Assembly (NCBI RefSeq): GCF_963853765.1
Contig: NC_088857.1
Location: 28,086,001 to 28,150,000, forward strand
Source of the DNA: Magallana gigas
Taxonomy: Eukaryota
Length of the DNA: 64,000 nucleotides
Direction of reading: 5' to 3'
In this document: positions 1-34,903 of the stretch, piece by piece
Layout of the letters: each line of letters begins with the position of its first letter
Numbering within the stretch: the stretch's first letter is position 1
Made by a program: the position numbers and the translations under genes
The notes under the pieces: model-generated
What the model saw: only the letters and a program-made list of their open reading frames with translations
The model's database searches: none
Told to the model about the DNA's origin: nothing

Positions 1-3000
1 TCTTAGTTGAAAACATTCACAAGAAGTAAAATATATTCCAACTTACCAATTGTGCAGTTCGTTCCATTAAAACCGACAGTACAAGCACATGTGTAATCAT
101 TGATCAGATCTATACAAGTTCCATTGTTCTGACAAGGTTCAGATGCACACTCATCGATATCTGAAATACACAACGTTCAATATATCTATACTACTAAAAT
201 AATGAACACTAATTCATGTGCTTTGTTACCCTCAAAATTGCTTGGAACTTCTTTTATATGTAAGTAAGTTAAAAATATCTGGAATTTGAACCGGAATGAA
301 AATGCGTATGGGGTAGGGAGGGTTTGTAAACAGTCATATTATGAAACATTTTTCAATTTAATTTAAAACAAATAGTAAAATCAAATAATGAAAAAAATAT
401 GCTTAAAATATTTAAAGAGACAGGTGTATTGTGTCTTTTGCATAAAAGGAAAATATAACGCATTGATAGTGCTTACTGATGTCACAATTTGTTCCATTGA
501 ATCCTGCAACACAATCACAGAGGTAGTCGTTGACCAGGTCTGTACAGGTTCCGTTGTTTTGACAAGGCTCTGGATTGCAGTCATCGATATCTACAATTTC
601 AAGTACCAACTGAATGAACAGAATTTTTTTCTCGACAATTCTTATTCTGATGTTTATGATGAAAATGACACCATATTTCACGAATATCAAATGTTCATGA
701 AGTAACACATTGAAGGTTTTCTGGATTCCTAGAAACAATTTCATTATGCAGGTATGGTGATTACTGTTTTCACAATTTGTTCCATTGAATCCTGCATCAC
801 AACTACATTGGTAGTCGTTGACCAGGTCTGTACAGGTTCCGTTGTTTTGACAAGGCTCTGGATTGCAGTCATCGATATCTACAATTTCAAGTACCAGCTG
901 CATGCATGAACAGAATCAAAACGAAATTATCTACAATTTTTAGTCTATGATTTTGATGCATGTCCTATACAGACTAGATTTGTATTTGCTCTTGTTTATC
1001 ATTGGATCAAAGATTCAAAAGTAAAGTATTCTCAATCAACTGCATTGTTTACAATATTATTACAATAACTTGGTTCTTAGTTGAAAACATTCACAAGAAG
1101 TAAAATATATTCCAACTTACCAATTGTGCAGTTCGTTCCATTAAAACCGACAGTACAAGCACATGTGTAATCATTGATCAGATCTATACAAGTTCCATTG
1201 TTCTGACAAGGTTCAGATGCACACTCATCGATATCTGAAATACACAACGTTCAATATATCTATACTACTAAAATAATGAACACTAATTCATGTGCTTTGT
1301 TACCCTCAAAATTGCTTGGAACTTCTTTTATATGTAAGTAAGTTAAAAATATCTGGAATTTGAACCGGAATGAAAATGCGTATGGGGTAGGGAGGGTTTG
1401 TAAACAGTCATATTATGAAACATTTTTCAATTTAATTTAAAACAAATAGTAAAATCAAATAATTAAAAAAATATACTTAAAATATTTAAAGAGACACGTG
1501 TATTGTGTCTTTTGCATAAAAGGAAAATATAACGCATTGATAGTGCTTACTGATGTCACAATTTGTTCCATTGAATCCTGCAACACAATCACAGAGGTAG
1601 TCGTTGACCAGGTCTGTACAGGTTCCGTTGTTTTGACAAGGCTCTGGATTGCAGTCATCGATATCTACAATTTCAAGTACCAACTGAATGAACAGAATTT
1701 TTTTCTCGACAATTCTTATTCTGATGTTTATGATGAAAATGACACCATATTTCACGAATATCAAATGTTCATGAAGTAACACATTGAAGGTTTTCTGGAT
1801 TCCCAGAAACAATTTCATTATGCAGGTATGGTGATTACTGTTTTCACAATTTGTTCCATTGAATCCTGCATCACAACTACATTGGTAGTCGTTGACCAGG
1901 TCTGTACAGGTTCCGTTGTTTTGACAAGGCTCTGGATTGCAGTCATCGATATCTACAATTTCAAGTACCAGCTGCATGCATGAACAGAATCAAAACGAGA
2001 TTATCTACAATTTTTAGTCTATGATTTTGATGCATGTCCTATACAGACTAGATTTGTATTTGCACTTGTTTATCATTGGATCAAAGATTCAAAAGTAAAG
2101 TATTCTCAATCAACTGCATTGTTTACAATATTATTACAATAACTTGGTTCTTAGTTGAAAACATTCACAAGAAGTAAAATATATTCCAACTTACCAATTG
2201 TGCAGTTCGTTCCATTAAAACCGACAGTACAAGCACATGTGTAATCATTGATCAGATCTATACAAGTTCCATTGTTCTGACAAGGTTGAGATGCACACTC
2301 ATCGATATCTAAAATACACAACGTTCAATATATCTATACTACTAAAATAATGAACACTAATTCATGTGCTTTGTTACCCTCAAAATTGCTTGGAACTTTT
2401 TTTTTATATGTAAGTAAGTTAAAAATATCTGGAATTTGAACCGGAATGAAAATGCATATGGGGTAGGGAGGGTTTGTAAACAGTCATATTATGAAACATT
2501 TTTCAATTTAATTTAAAACAAATAGTAAAATCAAATAATTAAAAAAATATACTTAAAATATTTAAAGAGACACGTGTATTGTGTCTTTTGCATAAAAGGA
2601 AAATATAACGCATTGATAGTGCTTACTGATGTCACAATTTGTTCCATTGAATCCTGCAACACAATCACAGAGGTAGTCGTTGACCAGGTCTGTACAGGTT
2701 CCGTTGTTTTGACAAGGCTCTGGATTGCAGTCATCGATATCTACAATTTCAAGTACCAACTGAATGAACAGAATTTTATTCTCGACAATTCTTATTCTGA
2801 TGTTTATGATGAAAATGACACCATATTTCACGAATATCAAATGTTCATGAAGTAACACATTGAAGGTTTTCTGGATTCCCAGAAACAATTTCATTATGCA
2901 GGTATGGTGATTACTGTTTTCACAATTTGTTCCATTGAATCCTGCATCACAACTACATTGGTAGTCGTTGACCAGGTCTGTACAGGTTCCGTTGTTTTGA

Positions 3001-6000
3001 CAAGGCTCTGGATTGCAGTCATCGATATCTACAATTTCAAGTACCAGCTGCATGCATGAACAGAATCAAAACGAAATTATCTACAATTTTTAGTCTATGA
3101 TTTTGATGCATGTCCTATACAGACTAGATTTGTATTTGCTCTTGTTTATCATTGGATCAAAGATTCAAAAGTAAAGTATTCTCAATCAACTGCATTGTTT
3201 ACAATATTATTACAATAACTTGGTTCTTAGTTGAAAACATTCACAAGAAGTAAAATATATTCCAACTTACCAATTGTGCAGTTCGTTCCATTAAAACCGA
3301 CAGTACAAGCACATGTGTAATCATTGATCAGATCTATACAAGTTCCATTGTTCTGACAAGGTTCAGATGCACACTCATCGATATCTGAAATACACAACGT
3401 TCAATATATCTATACTACTAAAATAATGAACACTAATTCATGTGCTTTGTTACCCTCAAAATTGCTTGGAACTTCTTTTATATGTAAGTAAGTTAAAAAT
3501 ATCTGGAATTTGAACCGGAATGAAAATGCGTATGGGGTAGGGAGGGTTTGTAAACAGTCATATTATGAAACATTTTTCAATTTAATTTAAAACAAATAGT
3601 AAAATCAAATAATGAAAAAAATATACTTAAAATATTTAAAGAGACAGGTGTATTGTGTCTTTTGCATAAAAGGAAAATATAACGCATTGATAGTGCTTAC
3701 TGATGTCACAATTTGTTCCATTGAATCCTGCAACACAATCACAGAGGTAGTCGTTGACCAGGTCTGTACAGGTTCCGTTGTTTTGACAAGGCTCTGGATT
3801 GCAGTCATCGATATCTACAATTTCAAGTACCAACTGAATGAACAGAATTTTTTTCTCGACAATTCTTATTCTGATGTTTATGATGAAAATGACACCATAT
3901 TTCACGAATATCAAATGTTCATGAAGTAACACATTGAAGGTTTTCTGGATTCCTAGAAACAATTTCATTATGCAGGTATGGTGATTACTGTTTTCACAAT
4001 TTGTTCCATTGAATCCTGCATCACAACTACATTGGTAGTCGTTGACCAGGTCTGTACAGGTTCCGTTGTTTTGACAAGGCTCTGGATTGCAGTCATCGAT
4101 ATCTACAATTTCAAGTACCAGCTGCATGCATGAACAGAATCAAAACGAGATTATCTACAATTTTTAGTCTATGATTTTGATGCATGTCCTATACAGACTA
4201 GATTTGTATTTGCTCTTGTTTATCATTGGATCAAAGATTCAAAAGTAAAGTATTCTCAATCAACTGCATTGTTTACAATATTATTACAATAACTTGGTTC
4301 TTAGTTGAAAACATTCACAAGAAGTAAAATATATTCCAACTTACCAATTGTGCAGTTCGTTCCATTAAAACCGACAGTACAAGCACATGTGTAATCATTG
4401 ATCAGATCTATACAAGTTCCATTGTTCTGACAAGGTTCAGATGCACACTCATCGATATCTGAAATACACAACGTTCAATATATCTATACTACTAAAATAA
4501 TGAACACTAATTCATGTGCTTTGTTACCCTCAAAATTGCTTGGAACTTTTTTTTTTATATGTAAGTAAGTTAAAAATATTTGGAATTTGAACCGGAATGA
4601 AAATGCATATGGGGTAGGGAGGGTTTCTAAACAGTCATATTATGAAACATTTTTCAATTTAATTTAAAACAAATAGTAAAATCAAATAATTAAAAAAATA
4701 TACTTAAAATATTTAAAGAGACACGTGTATTGTGTCTTTTGCATAAAAGGAAAATATAACGCATTGATAGTGCTTACTGATGTCACAATTTGTTCCATTG
4801 AATCCTGCAACACAATCACAGAGGTAGTCGTTGACCAGGTCTGTACAGGTTCCGTTGTTTTGACAAGGCTCTGGATTGCAGTCATCAATATCTACAATTT
4901 CAAGTACCAACTGAATGAACAGAATTTTTTTCTCGACAATTCTTATTCTGATGTTTATGATTAAAATGACACCATATTTCACGAATATCAAATGTTCATG
5001 AAGTAACACATTGAAGGTTTTCTGGATTCCCAGAAACAATTTCATTATGCAGGTATGGTGATTACTGTTTTCACAATTTGTTCCATTGAATCCTGCATCA
5101 CAACTACATTGGTAGTCGTTGACCAGGTCTGTACAGGTTCCGTTGTTTTGACAAGGCTCTGGATTGCAGTCATCGACATCTACAATTTCAAGTACCAGCT
5201 GCATGCATGAACAGAATCAAAACGAAATTATCTACAATTTTTAGTCTATGATTTTGATGCATGTCCTATACAGACTAGATTTGTATTTGCTCTTGTTTAT
5301 CATTGGATCAAAGATTCAAAAGTAAAGTATTCTCAATCAACTGCATTGTTTACAATATTATTACAATAACTTGGTTCTTAGTTGAAAACATTCACAAGAA
5401 GTAAAATATATTCCAACTTACCAATTGTGCAGTTCGTTCCATTAAAACCGAGAGTACAAGCACATGTGTAATCATTGATCAGATCTATACAAGTTCCATT
5501 GTTCTGACAAGGTTCAGATGCACACTCATCGATATCTGAAATACACAACGTTCAATACATCAATACTAGTAAGATAATGAACACTAATCCATGTGCTTTG
5601 TTACCCTCACAATTGCTTGGAACTTTTTTTTTTATGTAAGTCAGTTAAAAATATCTGGAATTTGAACTGGAACGAAAATGCGTTTGGGGTAGGGACAGTT
5701 TGTAAACAGTCATATTATGAAACATTTTTTCAATTTAATTTAAAACAAATAGTAAAATCAAATAGTTAAAATCTAGTTCAAATATTTATATAACACGTGT
5801 ATTGTGTCTTTTGCATAAAAGGAAAATATAACGCATTGATAGTGCTTACTGATGTCACAATTTGTTCCATTGAATCCTGCAACACAATCACAGTGGTAGT
5901 CGTTGACCAGATCTGTACAGGTTCCGTTGTTTTGACAAGGCTCTGGATTGCAGTCATCGATATCTACAATTTCAAGTACCAACTGAATGAACAGAATTTA

Positions 6001-9000
6001 TTTCTCGACAATTCTTATACTGATGTTTATGATGAAAATGACACCATATTTCACAAAAATCAAATGTTCATGAAGTAACACATTGAAGGTTTTCTGGATT
6101 CCAAGAAACAAATTCATTATGCAGGTATGGTGTTTACTGTTTTCACAATTTGTTCCATTGAATCCTGCAACACAACTACATTGGTAGACGTTGACTAGGT
6201 CTGTACAGGTTCCGTTGTTTTGACAAGGCTCTGGATTGCAGTCATCGATATCTACAATTTCAAGTACCAGCTGCATGCATGAACAGAATCAAAACGAGAT
6301 TATCTACAATTTTTTGTCTATGATTTTGATGCATGTCCTATACAGACTAGATTTGTATTTGCTCTTGTTTATCATTGGATCAAAGATTCAAAAGTAAAGT
6401 ATTCTCAATCAATTGCATTGTTTACAATATTCTTACAATAACTTGGTTCTTAGTTGAAAACATTCACAAGAAGTAAAATATATTCCAACTTACCAATTGT
6501 GCAGTTCGTTCCATTAAAACCGACAGTACAAGCACATGTGTAATCATTGATCAGATCTATACAAGTTCCATTGTTCTGACAAGGTTCAGATGCACACTCA
6601 TCGATATCTGAAATACACAACGTTCAATATATCTATACTTCTAAAATAATGAACACTAATTCATGTGCTTTGTTACCCTCAAAATTGCTTGGAACTTCTT
6701 TTATATGTAAGTAAGTTAAAAATATCTGGAATTTGAACCGGAATGAAAATGCGTCTGGGGTAGGGAGGGTTTGTAAACAGTCATATTATGAAACATTTTT
6801 CAATTTAATTTAAAACAAATAGTAAAATCAAATAATGAAAAAAATATGCTTAAAATATTTAAAGAGACAGGTGTATTGTGTCTTTTGCATAAAAGGAAAA
6901 TATAACGCATTGATAGTGCTTACTGATGTCACAATTTGTTCCATTGAATCCTGCAACACAATCACAGAGGTAGTCGTTGACCAGGTCTGTACAGGTTCCG
7001 TTGTTTTGACAAGGCTCTGGATTGCAGTCATCGATATCTACAATTTCAAGTACCAACTGAATGAACAGAATTTTTTTCTCGACAATTCTTATTCTGATGT
7101 TTATGATGAAAATGACACCATATTTCACGAATATCAAATGTTCATGAAGTAACACATTGAAGGTTTTCTGGATTCCTAGAAACAATTTCATTATGCAGGT
7201 ATGGTGATTACTGTTTTCACAATTTGTTCCATTGAATCCTGCATCACAACTACATTGGTAGTCGTTGACCAGGTCTGTACAGGTTCCGTTGTTTTGACAA
7301 GGCTCTGGATTGCAGTCATCGATATCTACAATTTCAAGTACCAGCTGCATGCATGAACAGAATCAAAACGAAATTATCTACAATTTTTAGTCTATGATTT
7401 TGATGCATGTCCTATACAGACTAGATTTGTATTTGCTCTTGTTTATCATTGGATCAAAGATTCAAAAGTAAAGTATTCTCAATCAACTGCATTGTTTACA
7501 ATATTATTACAATAACTTGGTTCTTAGTTGAAAACATTCACAAGAAGTAAAATATATTCCAACTTACCAATTGTGCAGTTCGTTCCATTAAAACCGACAG
7601 TACAAGCACATGTGTAATCATTGATCAGATCTATACAAGTTCCATTGTTCTGACAAGGTTCAGATGCACACTCATCGATATCTGAAATACACAACGTTCA
7701 ATATATCTATACTACTAAAATAATGAACACTAATTCATGTGCTTTGTTACCCTCAAAATTGCTTGGAACTTCTTTTATATGTAAGTAAGTTAAAAATATC
7801 TGGAATTTGAACCGGAATGAAAATGCGTATGGGGTAGGGAGGGTTTGTAAACAGTCATATTATGAAACATTTTTCAATTTAATTTAAAACAAATAGTAAA
7901 ATCAAATAATTAAAAAAATATACTTAAAATATTTAAAGAGACACGTGTATTGTGTCTTTTGCATAAAAGGAAAATATAACGCATTGATAGTGCTTACTGA
8001 TGTCACAATTTGTTCCATTGAATCCTGCAACACAATCACAGAGGTAGTCGTTGACCAGGTCTGTACAGGTTCCGTTGTTTTGACAAGGCTCTGGATTGCA
8101 GTCATCGATATCTACAATTTCAAGTACCAACTGAATGAACAGAATTTTTTTCTCGACAATTCTTATTCTGATGTTTATGATGAAAATGACACCATATTTC
8201 ACGAATATCAAATGTTCATGAAGTAACACATTGAAGGTTTTCTGGATTCCCAGAAACAATTTCATTATGCAGGTATGGTGATTACTGTTTTCACAATTTG
8301 TTCCATTGAATCCTGCATCACAACTACATTGGTAGTCGTTGACCAGGTCTGTACAGGTTCCGTTGTTTTGACAAGGCTCTGGATTGCAGTCATCGATATC
8401 TACAATTTCAAGTACCAGCTGCATGCATGAACAGAATCAAAACGAGATTATCTACAATTTTTAGTCTATGATTTTGATGCATGTCCTATACAGACTAGAT
8501 TTGTATTTGCACTTGTTTATCATTGGATCAAAGATTCAAAAGTAAAGTATTCTCAATCAACTGCATTGTTTACAATATTATTACAATAACTTGGTTCTTA
8601 GTTGAAAACATTCACAAGAAGTAAAATATATTCCAACTTACCAATTGTGCAGTTCGTTCCATTAAAACCGACAGTACAAGCACATGTGTAATCATTGATC
8701 AGATCTATACAAGTTCCATTGTTCTGACAAGGTTGAGATGCACACTCATCGATATCTAAAATACACAACGTTCAATATATCTATACTACTAAAATAATGA
8801 ACACTAATTCATGTGCTTTGTTACCCTCAAAATTGCTTGGAACTTTTTTTTTATATGTAAGTAAGTTAAAAATATCTGGAATTTGAACCGGAATGAAAAT
8901 GCATATGGGGTAGGGAGGGTTTGTAAACAGTCATATTATGAAACATTTTTCAATTTAATTTAAAACAAATAGTAAAATCAAATAATTAAAAAAATATACT

Positions 9001-12000
9001 TAAAATATTTAAAGAGACACGTGTATTGTGTCTTTTGCATAAAAGGAAAATATAACGCATTGATAGTGCTTACTGATGTCACAATTTGTTCCATTGAATC
9101 CTGCAACACAATCACAGAGGTAGTCGTTGACCAGGTCTGTACAGGTTCCGTTGTTTTGACAAGGCTCTGGATTGCAGTCATCGATATCTACAATTTCAAG
9201 TACCAACTGAATGAACAGAATTTTATTCTCGACAATTCTTATTCTGATGTTTATGATGAAAATGACACCATATTTCACGAATATCAAATGTTCATGAAGT
9301 AACACATTGAAGGTTTTCTGGATTCCCAGAAACAATTTCATTATGCAGGTATGGTGATTACTGTTTTCACAATTTGTTCCATTGAATCCTGCATCACAAC
9401 TACATTGGTAGTCGTTGACCAGGTCTGTACAGGTTCCGTTGTTTTGACAAGGCTCTGGATTGCAGTCATCGATATCTACAATTTCAAGTACCAGCTGCAT
9501 GCATGAACAGAATCAAAACGAAATTATCTACAATTTTTAGTCTATGATTTTGATGCATGTCCTATACAGACTAGATTTGTATTTGCTCTTGTTTATCATT
9601 GGATCAAAGATTCAAAAGTAAAGTATTCTCAATCAACTGCATTGTTTACAATATTATTACAATAACTTGGTTCTTAGTTGAAAACATTCACAAGAAGTAA
9701 AATATATTCCAACTTACCAATTGTGCAGTTCGTTCCATTAAAACCGACAGTACAAGCACATGTGTAATCATTGATCAGATCTATACAAGTTCCATTGTTC
9801 TGACAAGGTTCAGATGCACACTCATCGATATCTGAAATACACAACGTTCAATACATCAATACTAGTAAGATAATGAACACTAATCCATGTGCTTTGTTAC
9901 CCTCACAATTGCTGGGAACTTTTTTTTTTATGTAAGTCAGTTAAAAATATCTGGAATTTGAACTGGAACGAAAATGCGTTTGGGGTAGGGACAGTTTGTT
10001 AACAGTCATATTATGAAACATTTTTCAATTTAATTTAAAACAAATAGTAAAATCAAATAGTTAAAATCTAGTTCAAATATTTATATAACACGTGTATTGT
10101 GTCTTTTGCATAAAAGGAAAATATAACGCATTGATAGTGCTTACTGATGTCACAATTTGTTCCATTGAATCCTGCAACACAATCACAGAGGTAGTCGTTG
10201 ACCAGGTCTGTACAGGTTCCGTTGTTTTGACAAGGCTCTGGATTGCAGTCATCGATATCTACAATTTCAAGTACCAACTGAATGAACAGAATTTTTTTCT
10301 CGACAATTCTTATTCTGATGTTTATGATGAAAATGACACCATATTTCACGAATATCAAATGTTCATGAAGTAACACATTGAAGGTTTTCTGGATTCCTAG
10401 AAACAATTTCATTATGCAGGTATGGTGATTACTGTTTTCACAATTTGTTCCATTGAATCCTGCATCACAACTACATTGGTAGTCGTTGACCAGGTCTGTA
10501 CAGGTTCCGTTGTTTTGACAAGGCTCTGGATTGCAGTCATCGATATCTACAATTTCAAGTACCAGCTGCATGCATGAACAGAATCAAAACGAGATTATCT
10601 ACAATTTTTAGTCTATGATTTTGATCCATGTCCTATACAGACTAGATTTGTATTTGCTCTTGTTTATCATTGGATCAAAGATTCAAAAGTAAAGTATTCT
10701 CAATCAACTGCATTGTTTACAATATTATTACAATAACTTGGTTCTTAGTTGAAAACATTCACAAGAAGTAAAATATATTCCAACTTACCAATTGTGCAGT
10801 TCGTTCCATTAAAACCGACAGTACAAGCACATGTGTAATCATTGATCAGATCTATACAAGTTCCATTGTTCTGACAAGGTTCAGATGCACACTCATCGAT
10901 ATCTGAAATACACAACGTTCAATATATCTATACTACTAAAATAATGAACACTAATTCATGTGCTTTGTTACCCTCAAAATTGCTTGGAACTTTTTTTCTA
11001 TATGTAAGTAAGTTAAAAATATTTGGAATTTGAACCGGAATGAAAATGCATATGGGGTAGGGAGGGTTTGTAAACAGTCATATTATGAAACATTTTTCAA
11101 TTTAATTTAAAACAAATAGTAAAATCAAATAATTAAAAAAATATACTTAAAATATTTAAAGAGACACGTGTATTGTGTCTTTTGCATAAAAGAAAAATAT
11201 AACGCATTGATAGTGCTTACTGATGTCACAATTTGTTCCATTGAATCCTGCAACACAATCACAGAGGTAGTCGTTGACCAGGTCTGTACAGGTTCCGTTG
11301 TTTTGACAAGGCTCTGGATTGCAGTCATCAATATCTACAATTTCAAGTACCAACTGAATGAACAGAATTTTTTTCTCGACAATTCTTATTCTGATGTTTA
11401 TGATTAAAATGACACCATATTTCACGAATATCAAATGTTCATGAAGTAACACATTGAAGGTTTTCTGGATTCCCAGAAACAATTTCATTATGCAGGTATG
11501 GTGATTACTGTTTTCACAATTTGTTCCATTGAATCCTGCATCACAACTACATTGGTAGTCGTTGACCAGGTCTGTACAGGTTCCGTTGTTTTGACAAGGC
11601 TCTGGATTGCAGTCATCGATATCTACAATTTCAAGTACCAGCTGCATGCATGAACAGAATCAAAACGAAATTATCTACAATTTTTAGTCTATGATTTTGA
11701 TGCATGTCCTATACAGACTAGATATGTATTTGCTCTTGTTTATCATTGGATCAAAGATTCAAAAGTAAAGTATTCTCAATCAACTGCATTGTTTACAATA
11801 TTATTACAATAACTTGGTTCTTAGTTGAAAACATTCACAAGAAGTAAAATATATTCCAACTTACCAATTGTGCAGTTCGTTCCATTAAAACCGACAGTAC
11901 AAGCACATGTGTAATCATTGATCAGATCTATACAAGTTCCATTGTTCTGACAAGGTTGAGATGCACACTCATCGATATCTGAAATACACAACGTTCAATA

Positions 12001-12770
12001 TATCTATACTACTAAAATAATGAACACTAATCCATGTGCTTTGTTACCCTCAAAATTGCTTGGAACTTCTTTTATATGTAAGTAAGTTAAAAATATCTGG
12101 AATTTGAACCGGAATGAAGATGCGTATGGGGTAGGGAGGGTTTGTAAACAGTCATATTATGAAACATTTGTTCATTCAATTTAAAGCAAATAGTAAAATG
12201 AAATAGTTAAAATCTAGTTCAAATATTTCTAGAGACACGTGTATTGTGTCTTTTGCATAAAAGGAAAATATAACGCATTGATAGTGCTTACTGATGTCAC
12301 AATTTGTTCCATTGAATCCTGCAACACAATCACAGTGGTAGTCGTTGACCAGGTCTGTACAGGTTCCGTTGTTTTGACAAGGCTCTGGATTGCAGTCATC
12401 GATATCTACAATTTCAAGTACCAACTGAATGAACAGAATTTTTTTCTCAACAATTCTTATTCGGATGTTTATGATTAAAATTACACCATATTTCACGAAT
12501 ATCAAATGTTCATGAAGTAACACATTGAAGGTTTTTTAGATTCCCAGAAACAAATTCATTATGCAGGTATGGTGTTTACTGTTTTCACAATTTGGTCCAT
12601 TGAATCCTGCATCACAACTACATTGGTAGTCGTTGACCAGGTCTGTACAGGTTCCGTTGTTTTGACAAGGCTCTGGATTGCAGTCATCGATATCTACAAT
12701 TTCAAGTACCAGCTGCATGAACAGAATCAACACAAAATGATCTTCAATATTTTGTCAATGCTTTTGATGC
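1..12770 (-). repeat. Tandem array of 12 x ~1074-bp units, each with three 114-bp calcium-binding-type EGF exons
   Basis: Type A exons start at 47, 1121, 2195, 3271, 4345, 5422, 6494, 7568, 8642, 9718, 10789, 11865 ([37 protein letters not shown]). Type B start at 477, 1551, 2627, 3701, 4778, 5850, 6924, 7998, 9074, 10145, 11221, 12292. Type C start at 765, 1839, 2915, 3989, 5066, 6138, 7212, 8286, 9362, 10433, 11509, 12580. Each spans 114 bp; introns are nearly identical between units. Confidence 0.95.
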
Positions 12771-15700
12771 AATAAAATTGGGAGGTACCCAAAGGAGTGT
12801 CGCTCTCGTATTTGGTTTGCGTCAATTAACTATAAAATATTCTAAGAGAGAAAGAGGAGTATTAAGTTTAAGGTTTTAGCAATGTTTGTGTTAATTTTTT
12901 TTTTAAATTAAGTTAATTTAACTTGATTAGCCTGCATAAATCATATATAGTTTAAATTATTAAAACAAACATCTGTAGAAACATCCCTGTTGTGTCTTTT
13001 GCATAGACGAACATATTATGAATCTATATTGCTCACTGTTTTCACAATTTGCTCCATTGAATCCTGCCACACAATCACATTGGAAGCCGTTTACTAGGTC
13101 TGTACAGGTTCCGTTGTTTTGACAAGGCTCTGGATTGCAGTCATCGATATCTATAATTTCAAATACAATCTAACTGATCAAATGATAATGTTGTCCATCA
13201 ATGTATAAAGAATAACGAATGAAGAAAAGGACGAATAGAAGAACGGAACAGCAATTTTTATAAATTCAGGCATAAGCTTTCGGTTCACGGATTGGCCAGC
13301 GCTGGATTAGTTGTAGTCATAATATGAAACATATTTTCTTATTTAATTCAAAACAGTCAAATAATATTTCAAATAATAAAATTGTTGTTTCCATATCGAA
13401 TATCGAATTCTTCTTCCGAAAAGCTCTATGCAGCGGCACAGGCCCTTACATAAAAATTAGTTTTTAACTGTGACGAAAGGGGTCGAAAAGGAAATGCTCC
13501 CATATACGCACAATAGTTACTATTTAAAATTTTATGAAAAAGCCAAGGATTGGGTCGGGTTGTGAGGACCATCCAATCCGACGGATTATATATGGTACAT
13601 ACTTTTGCCAAATCGGATAGGAAAGTCAGTTTTTAAATACACATGATTTTAACATTAACATTACTTTATACAACGATTGATAAACTAGTTCTACAACTTA
13701 TATTAATATCTTTCGTTTGCACGGATGTTAGTGTGAGGGGGCCATTGATGTCTGTGGAAGCCGATTACCCGGAAAAAACCCACGTGTCCAAGCGGGCGAC
13801 CATCATACACATTCAAATACAACTACTGTCGATCACGTGGATCGAACTCGGGTCGCAGCGGTGATAAGCGAGTGCATTTTAAAACATTTTACATATACAT
13901 GTACTTTGTTATTCATCAAACAAATTCTTTAAACGTATTTAAGAAAAATGACCGGTTGTAAGGTATGTTTTGAAGGTAAGAATTAATTATGAAAGATTGT
14001 ATACGAAACACCATTTAGTATCCCCTTTCCTGAGGCTAAATATGATATTTTGGTGATTTTGATTAATTAATTAAATTAATTGATCACCGATAGTTGTCAG
14101 CGATGAATGTGCCAAGATTGAATATTTAACGCTATCTAGTATACAAAATAGCATACAAAATTCTGTATTAGCATAATTGCACGTTCATTTTATTTCCACC
14201 ACTTTTTTTATAATAATAATAAATTGTAACAATCAACTCCATCTATAAAATAAAGGAATATGAATTAATATTCATTAATCCTCTCAGTCATATTAAGAAG
14301 AAATTGGGGGAGGTCACTCGCGTTAAAAACAAGAACAGTTTTCATCTGAGACTGGTTTCACGATACCGCAACGGTGTGGACAATGTGAGAAGCTCTACCG
14401 CGAGGATGCGCGGTTTTACCTGAGTTACCTGTGCTAAACCGGGATATATTTAACACCACGAAGACTCGCGCTAAATACGAAAACCACATTGGCCGAAGTG
14501 TATGTCTTTTTTACTCCAATGATACTCTAATGATATGACTCCAATGTACTCCAATATATGATACCCAAATTATACTCTAATGATACCTCCTCGAAATCCA
14601 ATGATACCCCAATGATACCTCAATGAACTTTATGTTCTCTAATGATACATATTAAGCATAAATGATATACTTAATGAGTTTATTTAACCAAATCTCAACT
14701 ACACTACAACGTAATTTAAACCTGTGTTACTCGATGATTACTCAATATAGTCCAAAGATATCCAAACCAACCTAAGTGATACCACAATGAACCCGAATGA
14801 TCCTAATTACCATAAAGAATCTCCATGAGCCCAATGCAATGATACATTTCGAGGTAGCTTTTATTCTTGCTGTGGTACAGAAAAAAAATCCCATTCAACA
14901 CCAATTTATTTCAAGAAGCTATAATCCCAAATATTCACCAAATGAACATCAATTATACTTAAGACAACATTAATGTACCAAAATGAGTGCAAATAATATG
15001 TTTATTAACCTTAATAAAATATCTTCAAAACGAGTGTCATTGATATTTTTCTTAGAATTAACATTTTTTTTTTGAAAAGTTTAGAGATCCACTTTAAATG
15101 AAGTGTACAAGATCTTCAAATAATCCTGCTGTCCATCAATGTATTTTAAGTCAAAAGAATGAATGATGACAAGGATTGCTATTGCAATTTCTTTGAATTA
15201 ACGTATTAGCTTTGGATTCGCGGATGGAGTATTATTATATTATTATATATAGATGCAGAAGAGCACTTAATGGCATGTTTTATGGCTGTTCATTCTGTTG
15301 TTCATGTCAAAGATAACGAGCGTAAATAAACACTTCTGAATTCAAAACTACTGATATTTCCGAAAATTCACTGCAATCGTCTGACATCTACTGTTTAATC
15401 ACTGAAACATATTGTATATCCACTGTATATCTACTTTACATAGCTTCTGTATTCCATGGTACCCCACTGTACAGAGCTACTGTAATCCACTGTACAATAC
15501 TGTACCTGCCCACTGACCAGCACTGTACCCCACTAAACGCCACTGTAGGGGTACTGACCAGCACTGTTCCCCATTGTACAGGGTACTGACAAACACTGTC
15601 GGCACTGTTTCCCAATGTAACAATATTTTATCAGTTTTAATATTCAAAAATGAAAAAAAGTACTTTAAAAATGCATATTTTAGATAAAATGTGCATTGAA

Positions 15701-18700
15701 TAATATAGAAATTTTTCCGATTGCTTCCAAGAAAGAGAATGGGCTTCTATTTCTTTCAATTCATTATTACATTCGCGGATTCAGAGACCTTTTTCAGGGG
15801 AAGTGGTCCGAAAGATATCTATGTTAAAATGTAAATTTTAAAAAACTTGAACCCCCTCGTCCCCTCCCCTCTTTAGATCCGCGGATGTATTAATATTCGA
15901 GTCAAATTGGTATGATTACTTGTACACAAAAGATTTGGGAAACCTATATTACTCTTTTTAATGTTGTCTATAAATTACCATCAGGGTGTATTGCAGAACG
16001 TATTAAAGTGCACTTAGATAAATTGATAAACCGAGACCAAACTGGGTTCATTTAAGGCATATTTATTGGAGAAAACATTGAGTAATTTATGACATCATCA
16101 ATATACATATCATTAACGAATTCGTGGACTTCTAATGTTTTCAGGTTTTGAAAAGACTTTTGACACAATTTCTTGGGGATTCATTAAGCAAAATTTTATA
16201 ACTTTGGTAATAAGGTTAAAAATGGATTAACACATTTTATAAAGGAATAAAGTCATGTGTTTTACAGAACTGACTAATACCAGGTTACATCCTTAAAGAG
16301 ACTGCAGACAAGATATCCAATAACGTACTATCTTTTTCTCATTTGTGCAGAAATTCTTGGAATAATAATTTGAAATAATAAAGACATAAAAGATCTTAAA
16401 ATTGGTTATGTAGAATATAAGCTGTCTCAATATGTAGACGATGCATCCCTATTTCAAATGGTTCTCCCCTAACGTTTGATGGTTTTCTAAGAGAATTAGA
16501 CTTCTTTAAAAATATATCTGGTCTCAATATTAATTTCCAGAAAACAGAAATGTTATGGATAGATTGCAAAAATTTTTCTCAACATGTTTTTCATTATACC
16601 CGATGGAAGCTTGACAGGAACAACACAACATCTGACTTTCTCGGAATCAAATTTTTAATTAATCTCCAAGAATGTCTTAGCTAAACTATATTTCTAAATA
16701 ATTAGAAATCAATAAAATAACGAATCATTGCAAACATAGAAAATTGAAGTTTTATGTGTACTACATCCAACCCTCCGTCACAGATTAGGATGGCGGGAGG
16801 TTGGTGGATTTCCCTTTTGTCAAGAGTCTGCCCCACCCTTCCGCTTTTAAAAACGACGCTTCGTGCCTGTTAGTTAAGAAAACTTCCTTGATTTCGAATC
16901 TTTTATTTTTTTGCTAAAATTAATTTTACTCTTAAATACGCCACTAAAAATGTTCATGTTAAGAATTCGTTATGCATGTAGTAACTGCAGTAGGTGTTAT
17001 TATCGGTATGTAAAATTTGAACTCGATATTTTGAAATATATTTTTTTTAAAAAATCATTTCATGGGCAGGGAATTTGTGTGCTATCCAAAAATTTTACTT
17101 TTGTGATCCAATGTGCACTTATCTCTGGATATGTGTACACAAAAAAGCCCTAACTATGGATTTTGTTGATTCTGTGTTAATTGGCTGGTTATTTATTGGC
17201 TGAAGCACAAGGAATTAACAGCCCGGTCATATTAATCAAGGGCTTGTCATAAACTAAACGAAATAATTCTATAACCTGGCTGGTTAAGTAAGTGTACTTT
17301 CTTATGCTTATAAAGCAATGACCTCCAGTTTACAAATGAATCTATATAAAATTTATGCATTTTTAAAAATCAGATTTAAAATATAAAAATTTAGGATTTT
17401 TATATTCTCATTAAATTACTTTAAGAACTATTAATATTTTGTGCTTATACGATTCAATATGAATATTAATAAATAAAACATAATTAGATTTAAACGGTCT
17501 GTTGAACTCTTTTCTATGTCAATGCTGCATATAACTGAATATCGAGGAAAATATCATACTGAAATTATTTAGAATTTTTTTTTCTTTCAAATTTAATATA
17601 CAGGGGGTACGTTGGGTTACAGTGCTGGTTAGTGCTATGTACAGTGGCGAACAGTGGGGTTCGGTGCTGGTCAGTGCCTTGTACAATGGCGTACAGTGGG
17701 GTACAGTGCTGGTCATTAGAAATGAACAGTAGGGTACAGTGGGGTACACTAGAAGTCAGTACAAAGTACATAAGATGTCAGACAATGTGAGTGAATTTTC
17801 GGAAAGATCAGTGGATTTTGAATTCAGTAGTGATATAATGACTGAAAGAGGGACAATACAAACTTATTTTATACCAAAAGGAACCAACTTCAAAGGCTTT
17901 TAAAGAATAGTTGCATATGTAACTATCAAATAAATAAACTTTCACTTGAATTTAATTGCTTTGCATTTTTAAATGATTTAGATATTTCATATATGCTGTT
18001 ATGTTGTTTTGTTGCCATGTTGGCGCTAACCTGAATGCTGGTGCCTAAAAAGTTAATGCATGCATAATCAGTTTGAACTTTTATTGACTTACCTTGAGGT
18101 TTCTGACAGATGTAAGAGTAACTAACTGTACAACTTAAATCATTCCACATATGTGTACTCTGCAAAGTATGCACACAGTCTTCATCCCCTCCTGAATTGT
18201 TTGGCTCGCCTGTGTTCCAATTTGAATAAAACACTGGCTGCAAAAATTAAAGTTGTTGAAATGAAAATGTTCATTTATTTCACTACATGAATTATACATC
18301 TTAATATATTACTACATTTACATGTCATATTATATGTCGACAATGGATTTGTTTTAAAATAACTAGAGCTGTAAAGGACATCTATGTCAAAACTAAATGT
18401 ACTAACCGTTGAATCCTTAACCCATACAAAGGTGCCTTCATTGGCTATATCGTTCAGTCCAATCCAGTGGTATGTGTTGGGGCAAAGTTCTTTTCAATAA
18501 AAAAAAAATGATAAACGTAATGATAAACTATTTGGTTACGGCGTTAAAAATATATCATTATTTAATGTTCAAACACTATATCTTCTTGTCAGAGTTTTAT
18601 TTTAAGCAAACCCCAAACTGAAACAATTCTAAAACACGACATTTGTTGGTTGTTCTGCAATACAAAAAACGCAAGCGTGGAGTTTTGAAAAGCAGTACAG

Positions 18701-18821
18701 TGAAATACATAGAAGCGTTAAATAGGCGTTAACTCCAGAAAAGTTTTTACGTAATGCTTTGACTGACCTTTGTCCAATCAGATCGTAGAAGGCAGAGTTG
18801 AGACATTACCGCTCGTGACTT

Positions 18822-18865
<44 letters not shown>

Positions 18866-19548: not shown

Positions 19549-19616
<68 letters not shown>

Positions 19617-22600: not shown

Positions 22601-25600
22601 AAAATGCACCCCCAGTTTTAGAGAAGAAGTTAAAAATGTGAAAAGTTTACAGACGGACAGACAGACGGACGGACAGACGGACGACGGACAAAATGTGATC
22701 AGAATAGCTTTCAGAGTAGCTTTCAGCTCAGGTGAGCTAAAAATTAAGTGTAAATACCAAATGAAGCATTTCATTACCATAAAACATACTTCTATACAAA
22801 ACATAACATAAACATTTTATAATTCATTAAAAAACATATAAGATAAACGAAAACCACACTGTTGCTATAGTCTTTTCTTATTATAATTATATCTAAATAG
22901 TGGTAGATCCAGTATACTGGGACATAGAAGATAAAACTTACATTGTAAATCTGCCAGAGCTTCAATGCCAAAAATGTACTTGTTTGGTGCTAGAATGGAA
23001 TAAAATATACAAGTAACGTATAAGAATCATACGTATAGGTGTAATAAATCATACATTTGACATAAGAGGTAATTGTTTAAAATACCCTTTGAAATGTTAC
23101 AATTTTTATTAATAAAAATATATAAATAAGCTGCTTGTTGACAGAAATTCATTAAAATTAACCGGTATTAATACAAGTATTTTTTAGTACCCTGGGGTTT
23201 AAAATAAAACATACAAACAAGCAGAATTTCATATTAATATAGTTTCATTCCTCCTAAATGTATCTTCTTTCATGTGCAATAAAAAATCAAAGGTTATCTT
23301 TATCAAATTGCATATACAAGATGAATATACATGTACATATTAACGAACAATAGTACATAATTAGTGAACATAAAAAGTTACAAACATTTTATAATTTATC
23401 ATCAGTTCTGTTATAATTATCATTATAGAACTTTAAGATGAGAAGTTTTTACCTAAAATGATGAAGTGAATACTTATGATTGCAGTTATTTACTGATGCA
23501 AATTATCAGACAGCTTAGTAAAGAGATAGATTTATTAAAATATTTTATATTTTATTTAATTTGATGCAAAAAACATCTTTTAATGTATACTGAATGTGAT
23601 AGACTGGATAAAAAGATCTAGTAAACATTAAAGCATCACATCATCACCTTCCCGCTAATCCGCTTAAATGCCTGACGTATCCTTTAAAAAATGGTTTTTT
23701 TTTTTATAAAATATATGTGTATGCACCACATGTGTATGCAAATTAAAAGAGAGCAAATATTCAATTTCCTTGAACTACTACAGAAACTATAGAAATTTAG
23801 TAACAACATCCAAATTATTCACTGTCAAAATATGCCTGTTTTTATTAAGTAGTAAATATACATACATCGGACGGACAAATAAAGCACAATAATATATCAG
23901 ATGAGATACTTAAGATAGGGAAAACATATGATATGTATAGATTACCTGTAATATTAACTGTAATGCATCTCGATGGTGAGGATTGTCTACAACAATCAAA
24001 ATATTTAAATTTGATGTCATAAATTTGAACATAGAACAGTAAAAAAGTTTCATGTTAGACGCTAGACATATTTGATAGACTGTTGATAAATAATAAATCA
24101 TTAATTGAACTTTCCTTAATGTTCTAGTAAAAAATACTGCAGAGAAACAAATCTATTGTTATTATATGTATTTAATAAAAAATATATACATATTTTTACA
24201 GCAAATATAGCCCTTTTTAGCGACTATTATAAAGCCAAATGACTTCAAAATAGTCTTAACGCTCAAAGAAATGAGCAGATATCTACATAGTTATTTTATT
24301 TCTCTTAATTTGATAGGGAATAGGAAGTTACTTCAAAATATAGAGGACAATAAGGTGAGCCAAACTGTTCTTGTAGCTCCAAAGTAAGAAATCCAATCTT
24401 GGATTTCAAAACTACTAGGACGGTTAATATAATATGAAATCTTATTTATTTTCTCGATGCGTCAATCATAATTGTTATATTTTTTCATGGAAATGCCATT
24501 TTCTTTGGATCTCACGAAAAAATTAGGAAGCCATTTGTAATTTGAAGAGAATTGTGGGTCCAAGTCTGACGACAGATATGTGAACGGCAACACTATCTTT
24601 GCTAGCCGAGTGTTCGATTCCTTATTTTTCATCGCAAGAGACTGGCTAGCGGCGAAGATGAGGAAGCAGTAGTAGCAAAAATGATATCGCCCAAGTTCTG
24701 TCTGAGAGCATGTAGTTGTAGCGCTTTGCACTGCGGGCCTGCGTTCACTATTATTTGCTTTGTATGATCCTAATAAACATAACACCACTTGACTTCAACA
24801 AAGTTAAGGCAAAAAAATCGAAATCCACCATACTAAAGATACATCAATATCATAGTTATTCCATACTAGAAAAATAACTGCAAAGAAATGTGCTCAAATA
24901 CACAGATGCATAAAAAAATGTACATTCAAAAGAATATGATTTTTCCCTCGTTGAAAAGAACGAGCATACAACTCAAAAATTGATTTACATGGTTAAATGA
25001 TAGTTATACCCTTTAGTTTTGGTTACATGTATAATTACCATTTACCTTTTATTCGTCTCTGCTGAAAAGCACACTACATGTGTTCCGATTACATTACTGA
25101 CAACAGACTCTAGTGACATGATGACCTGATACTCGTCTACAACAGGTTGTGAGATGGCTGATATAGTAAATGGAAGAGGTGACATAACATGGAATTCTGT
25201 CACTCTGAAATAAGTTTATTACAGAAATATCATGAAAATAACTATAATGAATGCAAAAGCTAGAAAAAGTATTAAATATTTAATAAACATTTTCATAATC
25301 AATAATCTTCAATTTGAACGATTAGAATATCTTTATTTTTATATTAAAAACCTACTGACCCAAAAATTGCCACAACGCGCATCAAATTAAAATTTCATGT
25401 AATGATTTTTGAAACACTATTAAATGAAGATATTTATAATAAAAGATATTGTATATTGTTTTATAAATATATGTAAATATTGAAGTTTTTACTTACAGAT
25501 GAAATTGCAAAATTTTAAATAAAGCCAAATTTGCTTCATAAAATTTGAAACAAAGTGATGTCGGTATTTAAATTAATGATTTAACGAGAGTGTTTTTAAA

Positions 25601-28600
25601 AGTGATTATTGATACGGAGCTCGACCACACTGAATTTGATATCATGGTGGTTGCACAGATTTAAGGAAGTAAAGAACGTTTACACTGTACGCTAAAGTTA
25701 ATATCCCCATTCATTGAAAGCTAGGAACAAAAATTAACAATCATATTAACTTACATTTCATATGAAGAACGTGATTTAGCTCTTGCAATAAACTGTAACG
25801 ATCCGTTTTGAGAATGTAATGTATCTCCATCAAGAGGTGTGGGTGAAACAAAGGAACAGGATTCAGAACACGGAATACTGCTAACAATAATCATAAACTG
25901 TAAAGGAACGCTGCTTAATGGAACACTAGAGGACGAGTCTGTGAAATCCTCGATCTGTAAAGCCACGATGTAATCTCCATAACTCACATCGTAATGGAAA
26001 TAGAATGCACAGGCTGTCTAGGGGGAAAAATCATGCAAAATAATATTAATAAATCTGTTCAGCAGGCCAAGTTACAAAATTTCGAGATACAGTCCTACAT
26101 AATGTTCAAATTAAAAGAAAAAACCTACCTCATTTAATGTCAAATAAGATGAATGGTTGCTACAAATTGATCCACATTCGTCTAACCCTAATGCAAAGCG
26201 ACATCGAATATCATCTCCGTCAAAGTCCGCCACTTTGGAAAGTAAATATATTAAATATTGGCAATACAAACTTTCTTATCAGCTTTAATTAAAGAACAAA
26301 ATATATTTAGAATGAAAATACAATTTCAAAAGCAAGAAAATAGGATCTTCACAATTGGCACACGAGCCGAAATAACAGAATATTCGCGCGACCGAAAAGT
26401 GTAGATTTTGATCGTAAACTGTTGCCAAAAAAACCTCAAATATGGAAAAGTATTCGTATGAAATTTGCTCGATGTGCGATGCATTTAATCGTGCGATTTA
26501 TCATGCGTCTATATGCGACTGTTGTACAAAGAAAGTGAGTGTTGTAAGATAATGCGATAGGATCACGCAAGTGAACATGCGCAAATGCGATTGGACGTGC
26601 AACTCTCGTGCGATCATGCGTTTTGTGGTACGAATGATTGTGCGAGTCATAGGAATTATATGTATTTTCCCATTCCGATGACCCTCTTCAGTAAACATAC
26701 ATTGTAATTAAATGAGAGGGAAGATGACGCCCAAGAAGATGACCAAAGCAACACCCAAAACCGATGACTGAGAAAATGAGCAGCTCCTACGAATTTGCAT
26801 GGTCTATCTACATTTGTAATACTATGCACTCGTAGTAATTTTGTGTATTAAAGAAGTAAATGGGGATGAAATGTCAGATGTTTTACATGTAGATATAATT
26901 ACATTATATAATTACACTAATAACATTATACGTAACGTATCATCGGACAATCGGAATTTATGCGCGGGTGGGGTCTGGGTGGGTAATCCTGGGTAAAGTC
27001 ATACTTTACAATACATGTACCACAGGTTCAGAACTTTACCTTACGTTTTATCACTACGCAATTCTTTTCCTTTAGAGCAACAATGACAAACCGATTTTGA
27101 TTTTTTATATATAAAACCATGTGATTTGTATTTTTTTTAAGGTTACCAACAGTTTTTTGGTTAAAATTTTAAAGGCCAATGAAATGAAATCAATCTTTTG
27201 ATAGCGGTTTACAAGGAAAAAAGAATGTCAAGAATTAAGTGTATTTTAGAAAAAGGCTATTTTTTTTTACCTGGAATGTGAATGTACTGATTGAGTTCAC
27301 ACGGATGTATTATAGATGAAGCCATTGATGAAACAGGTGACTGGTTTGTGCTTCCAGTATCACTTCGTAGACTTAAATCTACAGTCATCTTAAGGCTCAA
27401 GGAATGAGCAAACGTAGGCTGTGTTAACGATACCAAATCCCCAGAGGCAAATCTAATATCAGAAATAATGATTTAATATGCAATATTTACCAACATATTT
27501 CTTGATTGAAAGACAACTATAGTTTTGTAATTTTTATGGTATTTTACATGTAGATGCATTTTGTCCAAATTGTATCACCGATATTTGAATAAATGGTCTA
27601 CATTTTTGGCAAAGTTTTGGTGATAAAAACAGTAACATTGAATATAATAATTCAACACATCTTTTAGGGTCTTTGTTATTAAGCCACATTGTAATGAAAA
27701 AATTAAATTCTGCTGTTGTGTGGGTTGTAATCACTTTTATCCAACAGCATTAAATATATAAAAAGTACCCGGGTTTAATTTTTAAGATTGTTCAGGAGAG
27801 AACAATTATAGTCATTTTGCCTGCTGTTTAGTTCAATTCAGTGTATTTCTATTTTAAATTAAAAACTTTTGAAAAAAATCATCAAATGTTTAGTAAGTAT
27901 TAACATTTAGTATATCTTTCAATATTTCATACAAAATAGAAAATTTTAACATATATAATAAAGATACATAAAATTGTCTTTTTTAATAAAACAAAATGGA
28001 TGTTTCATTCATGCATGATTATAATTTACAAACCGCAAACCGAGGTGTGATGATGTTGCGTGTCTGATATCAAATATGGTTTCTCCTTCAAAATCCGCCC
28101 AGTTTTCTGCTGAATTGCTTTCCGTGCAATTTGCATTCGTTATCACACTACCTGTACATCCACTGATACATTCCAATGTATTGTTTTGTGGATTGGAACA
28201 GTAGGAGTAGACATAGGTAAGACGGTGACGGACTAGAATCTGGAAAAACAAAAAATGAAGAAAAAAATTGATAATAAAAATCCAACCGATGCCTATTGGT
28301 TTTCAAATGTGGTGTATATGTACTTCAGTCAATAATTGAAACCGCTGTTTAAAGTTTGATCTGCAAACAGTTATTTTCATCGAAAAAGTCTTGACCTCGA
28401 TTGGCATAACATAAGTATTAATCAACATTGCTTTAAAAACTGATTATTTAGTGTAAAAAAAGATTTATCGGTTAAGATCTGCTTTTAACTGACCAAAATA
28501 GTCCAAGCAATAAATTATTCAAATCAAGCAAAGTACTGAATTAGTTTGGTTTAATTGTGATCTTCAGTTGATGAGAAAAAATGTTCTTGACAAAAACTAC

Positions 28601-32401: not shown

Positions 32402-32440
32402 CTGAAATAATTTGTAATCAGTACATATTATAATTTACAC

Positions 32441-34900: not shown

Positions 34901-34903
34901 AAT

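What the first reader, a model, noticed from the sequence alone, without database searches (positions are those of the whole stretch)
1..12770. Twelve near-identical three-exon units: a coding VNTR that sets stalk length
Seen: introns as well as exons are almost identical over 12 units of 1071-1077 bp, so the expansion is very recent or homogenised. All exons are phase 1-1 and 114 bp, so any gain, loss or skipping keeps the frame. Inference: unequal crossing-over and exon skipping could give allele- and isoform-level variation in how far the lectin head projects.
Basis: partly seen in the sequence, partly recalled or inferred. Interest (0 to 1): 0.7.

Follow-up and report, generated by a model that had tools for sequence, protein, structure and literature searches.

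The report
Recently amplified EGF-exon array, oyster lectin gene
An oyster gene carries about 22 near-identical tandem copies of a three-exon block, which are transcribed and spliced into a protein with a sugar-binding lectin domain followed by 66 calcium-binding EGF domains; this is a real example of a known kind of repeat, but it is not shown that the copy number varies between animals.

Summary
The gene is on the minus strand. The window cuts the array, which runs from 10.5 kb left of the window to position 13,150. It has 22 units of about 1,074 bp and 66 EGF exons. Sixty-five exons are 114 bp and one is 120 bp; all have AG/GT borders and are phase 1-1. The 15 core units are 96-100% identical including introns, some units are identical, and the array edges have diverged (82-97%). 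Multi-unit blocks are duplicated inside the array, as unequal crossing-over would produce. The unit's intron occurs 22 times in the genome, only here.

RNA reads show minus-strand transcription, the expected splice joints, and 186 reads joining exons of interior units. A complete three-exon C-type lectin domain (18,093-20,045) is spliced onto an EGF exon in 5 reads.

A SEA-like module and a cysteine-rich module follow the array. No membrane anchor was found, and the 5' link is unresolved.

Copy-number polymorphism could not be tested, because DNA runs exist only as contigs. Exon skipping got no clear support. The "stalk length" reading is therefore only partly supported.

This is a new member of a known kind, the multi-exon coding tandem arrays. 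The scan noted a similar four-exon array elsewhere in this genome.

The parts
1..12938 (-). Window part of the tandem array: the last 46 bases of unit 9 and units 10-21. Units are about 1,074 bp, each with three 114-bp calcium-binding EGF exons in gene order C, B, A. The array continues to window -10,480 (G000:C5:28,075,520).
   Evidence: Pfam EGF PF00008 above its cut-off for each exon type
13037..13150 (-). First EGF exon of the array (D0), older and diverged, 114 bp, phase 1-1.
   Evidence: RNA joint 12693/13037
18093..18237 (-). C-type lectin exon L3 (145 bp, phase 0 to 1), with EPN and WND motifs. Its donor at 18093 is joined in RNA to an EGF exon.
   Evidence: Pfam Lectin_C profile positions 68-107; sequence; joint 18093 to EGF start in 5 reads of two runs
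18407..18489 (-). C-type lectin exon L2 (83 bp, phase 1 to 0).
   Evidence: Pfam Lectin_C profile positions 38-67; RNA contigs and reads continue from L3 into the end of L2
19884..20045 (-). C-type lectin exon L1 (162 bp, phase 1 to 1).
   Evidence: Pfam Lectin_C profile positions 3-34; sequence
25046..29937 (-). Six candidate 5' exons shared with the paralogous gene B: a signal-peptide-like exon 29833-29937, then 28030-28239, 27271-27418, 26129-26232, 25755-26017 and 25046-25204. No known domain was found. The link to the lectin exons is unresolved.
   Evidence: colinear matches to gene B; splice phases; no Pfam match; no Atlas lead
30508..36167 (-). Ngaro/DIRS-type tyrosine-recombinase retroelement between gene A and gene B. 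It is not part of the array.
   Evidence: Pfam RVT_1, Phage_integrase and GDSL hydrolase; split direct repeats
41064..61000 (-). Window part of gene B, the tandem paralogue. It has 26 EGF exons (44,106-55,442) with their own repeat of about 2.05 kb, SEA-like and cysteine-rich exons at 41.2-43.7 kb, and no lectin exons. Its 5' exons continue beyond the window to about 81 kb.

Best explanation
This is a real, recently amplified and still recombining tandem array of a three-exon cassette inside an expressed oyster gene on the minus strand. Each exon encodes one 38-residue calcium-binding EGF domain and is a symmetric phase 1-1 module. Unequal crossing-over between units, in register shifts of one to seven units, therefore adds or removes blocks of 114 residues without breaking the frame. 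The mature message reads: C-type lectin domain (mannose-type EPN/WND site), then 66 EGF domains (2,510 residues, 149 N-glycosylation sequons), then a SEA-like module and a short cysteine-rich module. By analogy with fibrillin and Notch, a run of calcium-binding EGF domains forms a stiff, glycosylated rod. That would be roughly 170-200 nm here, about 8-9 nm per unit; this is an inference, not measured. The rod separates the lectin end from the SEA end. Shown: the array, its coding integrity, its uniqueness in the genome, transcription and splicing of interior units, and the lectin-to-EGF splice. Inferred: the rod geometry, the recombination mechanism, and that unit number varies between individuals. 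Not established: how or whether the protein is anchored, and what lies 5' of the lectin exons.
For: Array structure and intact exons. Homogenised core with diverged edges, identical units and duplicated three-unit blocks (units 10-12 against 16-18 differ at 2 positions; units 6-8 against 13-15 at 17). Exons are three times less diverse than introns. All 22 copies of the unit intron lie in this array. From the RNA reads: first mates lie on the + strand over exons and almost none lie in introns; there are joints 12405/12580 (130 reads) and 12693/13037 (7 reads); and 186 reads run from a B exon into the A-exon start. That 30-mer occurs 16 times in the genome, all in this array. Lectin-to-EGF joint in 5 reads. 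The three lectin exons tile the Pfam Lectin_C profile at positions 3-34, 38-67 and 68-107. The phases of L1-L3 fit the EGF exons. 63 of 66 exons match the calcium-binding EGF signature. A transcript-derived fragment shows the SEA-like module spliced to the cysteine-rich module. Relatives of it match Pfam SEA. A paralogue with a lectin domain and only 12 diverged EGF exons, and gene B with 26, show that array length changes between paralogues.
Against: No DNA read depth or spanning long reads could be examined, so the exact unit number rests on the assembly alone; the adjacent identical units 9 and 10 are where an assembler could err. Polymorphism was not tested. Among exon variants, 15 are non-synonymous and 4 synonymous, so selection on the protein sequence between copies is not evident. 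No transmembrane segment was found. The last 5' exon shared with gene B ends in phase 2 in this gene, which does not fit the phase-1 acceptor of the first lectin exon, so the start of the protein is unknown. One RNA contig (run X15) reads through the lectin exon's donor to 17,891, which would give a short lectin without EGF domains. Reads from other EGF genes also pile on these exons, so depth cannot be used as a count.
Confidence: 0.75

Rival explanations
1. Assembly artefact: the array exists, but its unit number, especially the identical units, was inflated or collapsed by the assembler.
For: Units 9 and 10 are identical and adjacent, and 11=17 and 12=18 are identical. No raw DNA reads were available.
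Against: There are no gaps. Units carry their own variants in a consistent mosaic with diverged edges. All 66 exons are intact. At position 12595 only 7 of 259 (run X22) and 4 of 76 (run X21) RNA reads carry the letter specific to the edge unit. That fits some 20-40 similar exons per message, although other genes contribute reads. Fourteen DNA runs from several studies hold half or more of the sampled words of the array edge and lectin region.
Confidence: 0.15
2. Fixed array rather than VNTR: the expansion is real but the unit number is the same in all individuals and all exons are always included, so it gives no allelic or isoform variation.
For: Nothing here shows variation. All clearly placed joints are the constitutive ones.
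Against: Units 1,074 bp long at 99-100% identity, and recent multi-unit duplications, are the substrate on which unequal exchange normally keeps generating length alleles (general knowledge of tandem arrays). The share of reads with the alternative letter at 12612 differs between two RNA runs (77/88 against 186/272), but paralogue expression could cause that.
Confidence: 0.3
3. Not a stalk: the protein is a secreted, fibropellin-like matrix or adhesion protein in which the EGF domains themselves are the working surface. In that case array length changes valency or polymer length rather than the reach of the lectin.
For: No anchor was found. The gene-B-like transcript fragment ends shortly after the cysteine-rich module. 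Gene B has the same architecture without any lectin domain.
Against: A distant relative (P0010) has the SEA and cysteine-rich modules followed by a clear transmembrane helix and a tail. A short hydrophobic exon candidate exists in gene A (window -15,543), but it is not conserved in frame in gene B.
Confidence: 0.35
4. Decaying gene: the locus is transcribed but no longer encodes one functional protein, for example because the 5' part cannot be joined in frame.
For: The phase-2 donor of exon 25046-25204 does not fit L1 or any EGF exon. No alternative signal-peptide exon was found between 20.0 and 25.0 kb. The non-synonymous to synonymous ratio among copies is near neutral.
Against: All 66 EGF exons and the three lectin exons are open, with intact cysteines and splice sites. 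Exons are three times less diverse than introns. Splicing is accurate in poly(A) RNA. An RNA contig extends 970 nt 5' of L3, more than L1 and L2 together, so further upstream exons are transcribed.
Confidence: 0.12

Closest known systems
Human LPA kringle IV-2 coding VNTR (own knowledge)
   Same: It is a multi-exon unit, introns included, repeated head to tail at very high identity inside a gene. Every unit adds one protein module in frame, and array length changes by unequal exchange.
   Different: LPA has a two-exon 5.5-kb unit coding a kringle, with proven copy-number polymorphism of about 1 to over 40. Here the unit has three exons in 1.07 kb and codes three EGF domains, and polymorphism is untested.
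DC-SIGN / L-SIGN neck-repeat polymorphism (own knowledge)
   Same: A C-type lectin domain is carried on a repeated spacer whose repeat number could set reach and presentation.
   Different: The neck repeats are 23-residue helical units within one exon of a type II membrane protein, and their number is polymorphic. Here the spacer is made of EGF domains, one exon each, the lectin lies N-terminal of it, and no anchor was found.
Selectins: lectin, EGF, sushi repeats, membrane anchor (own knowledge)
   Same: A C-type lectin domain is followed directly by an EGF domain, and a repeated-module spacer follows the head.
   Different: Selectins have one EGF domain and 2-9 sushi domains, then a transmembrane helix. 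Here there are 66 EGF domains, no sushi domain, and a SEA-like module at the end.
Notch-type and fibropellin-type EGF arrays of invertebrates (own knowledge)
   Same: The domains are 38-residue calcium-binding EGF domains with D/N-I-D-E/D-C linkers, O-fucose and O-glucose consensus sites, and one domain per phase 1-1 exon.
   Different: Those arrays are old and their domains are diverged. Here most domains belong to three exon types repeated at 96-100% nucleotide identity, introns included.
Four-exon array in a giant chitin-binding-domain gene of the same genome (earlier finding s1-385426, not checked here)
   Same: It is a multi-exon coding unit amplified in tandem and kept uniform in the same oyster genome.
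   Different: It has another domain type, a unit of about 1,342 bp and about six copies.

Membership tests
Calcium-binding EGF domain | Six cysteines in the EGF spacing, recognised by the Pfam EGF model | tested here: met
   PF00008 at 38-42 bits (cut-off 21.5) for each of the three exon types. All 66 exons have the six-cysteine pattern.
Calcium-binding EGF domain | N-terminal D/N-x-D/N-E/Q/D motif and C-x-D/N-x4-F/Y-x-C (PROSITE EGF_CA and Asx-hydroxylation signatures) | tested here: met
   63 of 66 exons match the signature and 65 of 66 the hydroxylation motif. The split codon at every exon junction gives D or N. The Pfam EGF_CA score is below its cut-off (21.1 against 27).
C-type lectin domain | Full-length match to the Lectin_C profile | tested here: met
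   Three consecutive exons match profile positions 3-34, 38-67 and 68-107 of 107. L1 and L3 pass the cut-off and L2 is just under it. The exons were searched one by one and were not joined.
C-type lectin domain | Calcium-site-2 sugar-binding motifs (EPN or QPD, and WND) | tested here: met
   EPN and WND are present in exon L3. Sugar binding itself was not tested.
SEA domain | Match to the SEA profile or fold, with the G-S-[VI]-V-V cleavage motif | tested here: inconclusive
   The motif GSLIV is invariant in 9 relatives. 2 of 9 relatives match PF01390, best E 2.5e-6; this gene's own version does not. The model has a beta-alpha-beta-beta-alpha-beta order, but pLDDT is 65 and it gave only generic ferredoxin-like hits. 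There was no PDB sequence match.
Selectin | Lectin, one EGF, sushi (CCP) repeats and a transmembrane helix | tested here: not met
   Between the lectin exons and the SEA-like module lie only the 66 EGF exons; no sushi-type exon turned up in the open-frame listings, though these were not scanned with a sushi profile. No conserved transmembrane segment was found.
Coding VNTR / macrosatellite | Head-to-tail units inside a coding region, each adding residues in frame | tested here: met
   22 units; each full unit adds 342 coding bases, or 114 residues.
Coding VNTR / macrosatellite | Unit number differs between individuals | not testable with these tools

The most novel reading that the evidence does not exclude
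The array is a hypervariable coding repeat. On this reading, oysters carry alleles with very different numbers of the 114-residue EGF block. Together with an alternative short lectin-only message, this would give individual-specific lengths of a mannose-type lectin on a rigid glycosylated rod. That would be a length-based layer of diversity in invertebrate recognition, whether in immunity, settlement or gamete contact.
Probability: 0.15. Interest if true: 0.7.

Novelty: new member of a known kind. Interest (0 to 1): 0.4.

Why it matters
Multi-exon coding repeats are among the fastest-changing parts of animal genes and are usually mis-assembled or mis-annotated. Here the structure is resolved exon by exon and shown to be transcribed. 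It gives a clean case for measuring how often exon-cassette arrays change length in a highly polymorphic animal. It could also test whether the length of an EGF rod that carries a lectin affects recognition. If unit number proves fixed, it remains an ordinary though striking example of recent exon amplification.

Tried and rejected
1. Tandem Repeats Finder cannot see the array, because its longest period is 500; the direct-repeat tool and my own scripts were used instead.

2. A whole-unit DNA search of the own genome scored only gene B, because common words are skipped; an intron-only probe worked.

3. The representative-protein search with the SEA-like exon returned only 10 short fragments and no full-length annotated protein. 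The exact look-up of P0003 found no contig.

4. Looking for a transmembrane exon failed. This covered hydropathy scans at several thresholds, a conservation filter against gene B, and an acceptor-anchored scan. One candidate in gene A is frame-shifted in gene B. A tblastx comparison of the two 3' regions was uninformative, because the duplication is too young and all frames are conserved.

5. Identifying the 5' domain failed: no Pfam match and no Atlas lead.

6. No signal-peptide exon was found between the lectin exons and the shared 5' exons.

7. The fold test of the SEA-like module was inconclusive.

8. Two literature searches found no description of this gene or of EGF-exon VNTRs in molluscs.

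9. Using RNA depth as a unit count was rejected: reads of other EGF genes map here, and B, C and D0 exons share 55 identical starting bases.

Full report
**Where and what.** The window is G000:C5:28,086,001-28,150,000 of a 564-Mb assembly in 29 pieces. Public runs that hold the stretch are labelled as oyster. G+C is about 32% and there are no N.

**The observation.**
- Direct-repeat analysis finds twelve copies with start-to-start spacing of 1071-1077 bp from position 1.
- The coding strand is the minus strand.
- Each unit carries three EGF exons, which I call C, B and A in gene order.
- Each exon is 114 bp and bordered by AG and GT. Two bases complete a codon at its start and one base is left over at its end, which is phase 1-1.

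I fetched the 30 kb to the left. The array then runs from window -10,480 to 13,150, a span of 23.6 kb. It holds 66 EGF exons (65 of 114 bp, one of 120 bp), all open and all with AG/GT borders, and it encodes 2,510 residues. The exon order is:
- one older exon, D0, at 13,037-13,150;
- 20 full C-B-A units, one unit lacking C, and one B plus diverged-A unit;
- a terminal diverged exon.

**Internal structure of the array.**
- An alignment of the 22 units shows a core, units 6-20 (window -4,249 to 11,864), at 96-100% identity.
- The flanks have diverged. Units 1-5 are 95-98% identical to the rest, unit 0 is 92-94%, and the unit nearest the lectin is 82-89%.
- Units 9 and 10 are identical, and so are 11 and 17, and 12 and 18.
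- The block 10-12 differs from 16-18 at 2 positions in 3.2 kb, and 6-8 differs from 13-15 at 17 positions. These are register shifts of six and seven units. This agrees with, and refines, the other first-stage note about a 6,447-bp period.
- A homogenised core with diverged edges and duplicated multi-unit blocks is the usual signature of unequal exchange in a real array.
- A 306-bp intron probe has exactly 22 copies in the genome, all here.
- In the core, nucleotide diversity is 0.0066 in exons and 0.021 in introns.
- Among exon variants, 15 are non-synonymous and 4 synonymous. None touches a cysteine or a splice site.

**The domains.**
- Each exon type passes the Pfam EGF model.
- 63 of 66 exons match the calcium-binding EGF signature, and 65 of 66 match the Asx-hydroxylation motif.
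- All 66 have the C2-x4-T-C3 pattern known as the O-fucose consensus, and 23 have the C-x-S-x-P/A-C O-glucose consensus.
- There are 149 N-x-S/T sequons.
- The codon split across each exon junction is always D or N.
- From established knowledge of fibrillin and Notch, such runs form calcium-stiffened rods. The estimate of about 2.7-3 nm per domain, hence 170-200 nm in total, is my inference.

**The lectin head.**
- Upstream on the same strand lie three exons: 19,884-20,045, 18,407-18,489 and 18,093-18,237.
- Taken one by one, they match the Pfam Lectin_C profile at positions 3-34, 38-67 and 68-107 of 107.
- They carry EPN and WND motifs.
- The module starts and ends in phase 1, so it fits the EGF exons.

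**RNA evidence.** I laid two poly(A) raw-read runs and two RNA contig runs on window 12,250-18,249.
- Over exons the first mates lie on the + strand, which in most stranded libraries means a minus-strand RNA. Introns are almost empty.
- The joints are 12405/12580 (130 reads; skipped ends CT..AC, which is GT..AG on the minus strand) and 12693/13037 (7 reads).
- The lectin donor at 18,093 is joined to an EGF exon start in 5 reads of two runs. The tool placed that start at 12,405, but D0, C and B exons share their first 55 bases. The partner is therefore most simply D0.
- 186 reads run from a B exon into the sequence that starts the A exons. This 30-mer occurs 16 times in the genome, all in interior units of this array. 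Interior units are therefore transcribed and spliced.
- Joints that would suggest skipping (12405/13037, and 12693 back to 12580) have short or non-discriminating sides. I do not count them as evidence.
- One contig of run X15 (1,318 nt) reads through the lectin donor to 17,891, where the frame stops near 17,929. It also extends 970 nt 5' of L3. This suggests a short lectin-only form in that sample. The poly(A) runs show no reads there.
- Many reads come from other EGF genes (their loose ends are not in this region), so depth is no copy number.
- As a rough check, only 7 of 259 (X22) and 4 of 76 (X21) reads carry the letter specific to the edge unit at 12,595. That is what some 20-40 similar exons per message would give.

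**Downstream of the array (left of the window).**
- There are exons for a SEA-like module at window -11,000 to -11,092, -11,176 to -11,238 and -12,200 to -12,370, the last containing the motif GSLIV.
- A short cysteine-rich module follows at -12,463 to -12,570.
- A transcript-derived fragment from the protein library, P0003, is 98% identical in the main exon and shows these exons spliced together. It ends 13 residues later.
- A more distant relative, P0010, passes Pfam SEA and continues into a clear transmembrane helix and tail.
- The fold test of the module was inconclusive: pLDDT 65 and only generic ferredoxin-like hits.
- I found no transmembrane segment conserved between this gene and its paralogue. 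Anchoring is open.

**Paralogues.**
- Gene B (window 37-81 kb, minus strand) is a tandem duplicate. Its introns can still be aligned to those of gene A at 68-78%. It has 26 EGF exons with their own amplification of about 2.05 kb at 97.7%. It has no lectin exons.
- A third gene at C5:35.98 Mb has a lectin module at 69-85% protein identity, followed by 12 diverged EGF exons.
- The SEA-like exon has only four loci in the genome.
- Array length thus differs greatly between paralogues. The lectin module looks like a phase 1-1 insert specific to this gene.

**The 5' end.**
- Six exons shared with gene B, including a signal-peptide-like start at 29,937, are phase-consistent among themselves.
- The last one, 25,046-25,204, ends in phase 2 in this gene, against phase 1 in gene B. 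It does not fit the first lectin exon.
- No alternative first exon was found.
- The X15 contig shows that more than L1 and L2 is transcribed upstream. The start of the protein nevertheless remains unresolved.

**What could not be done.**
- All DNA runs are held only as contigs, and the single reads call was used for RNA. The assembly's unit count and variation between individuals are therefore untested.

**Verdict.** The VNTR status, exon skipping and the stalk role remain hypotheses. The nearest known cases are multi-exon coding arrays such as human LPA KIV-2 and lectins on repeat necks such as L-SIGN (own knowledge). The scan has noted a similar four-exon array elsewhere in this genome. I rate it a new member of a known kind, of moderate interest.

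Noticed in passing
window 30508-36167: A seemingly intact tyrosine-recombinase retroelement of Ngaro/DIRS type lies between the two EGF genes. It has open frames for a gag-like protein, reverse transcriptase, a phage-integrase-type recombinase and a GDSL-type hydrolase. It also has split direct repeats: 30508-30820 against 31307-31619 at 99.4%, and 31099-31328 against 35942-36167 at 96.5%.
   Followed up: partly
window 46279-51480: Gene B has its own recent amplification. A unit of about 2.05 kb holding several EGF exons is repeated about 2.5 times at 96.5-97.7% identity, introns included.
   Followed up: partly
window 17891-18093: An RNA contig of run X15 (1,318 nt, depth 96) reads through the donor of the last lectin exon. 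The frame stops near 17,929, which would give a short lectin without EGF domains. The two poly(A) runs show no such reads.
   Followed up: no
L007-L011 (G000:C5:35,949,001-35,999,000): A third gene has a related C-type lectin module followed by 12 diverged EGF exons on the minus strand. It could be the source or a sister of the lectin module in this gene.
   Followed up: partly
window 25046-25204 against 60803-60976: The donor of this shared 5' exon lies one base later in gene A than in gene B, next to a run of A. This changes its phase from 1 to 2. It could be a real difference, a polymorphism or a homopolymer error in the assembly.
   Followed up: no
window 13650-14050: An intronic stretch is covered by RNA on both strands and at very high contig depth in run X15. 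It is probably an expressed dispersed repeat.
   Followed up: no
G000:C2:20,648,297-20,670,617: Two further loci carry a SEA-like exon at 45-47% identity to the one of this gene. They are the only other relatives in the genome.
   Followed up: no
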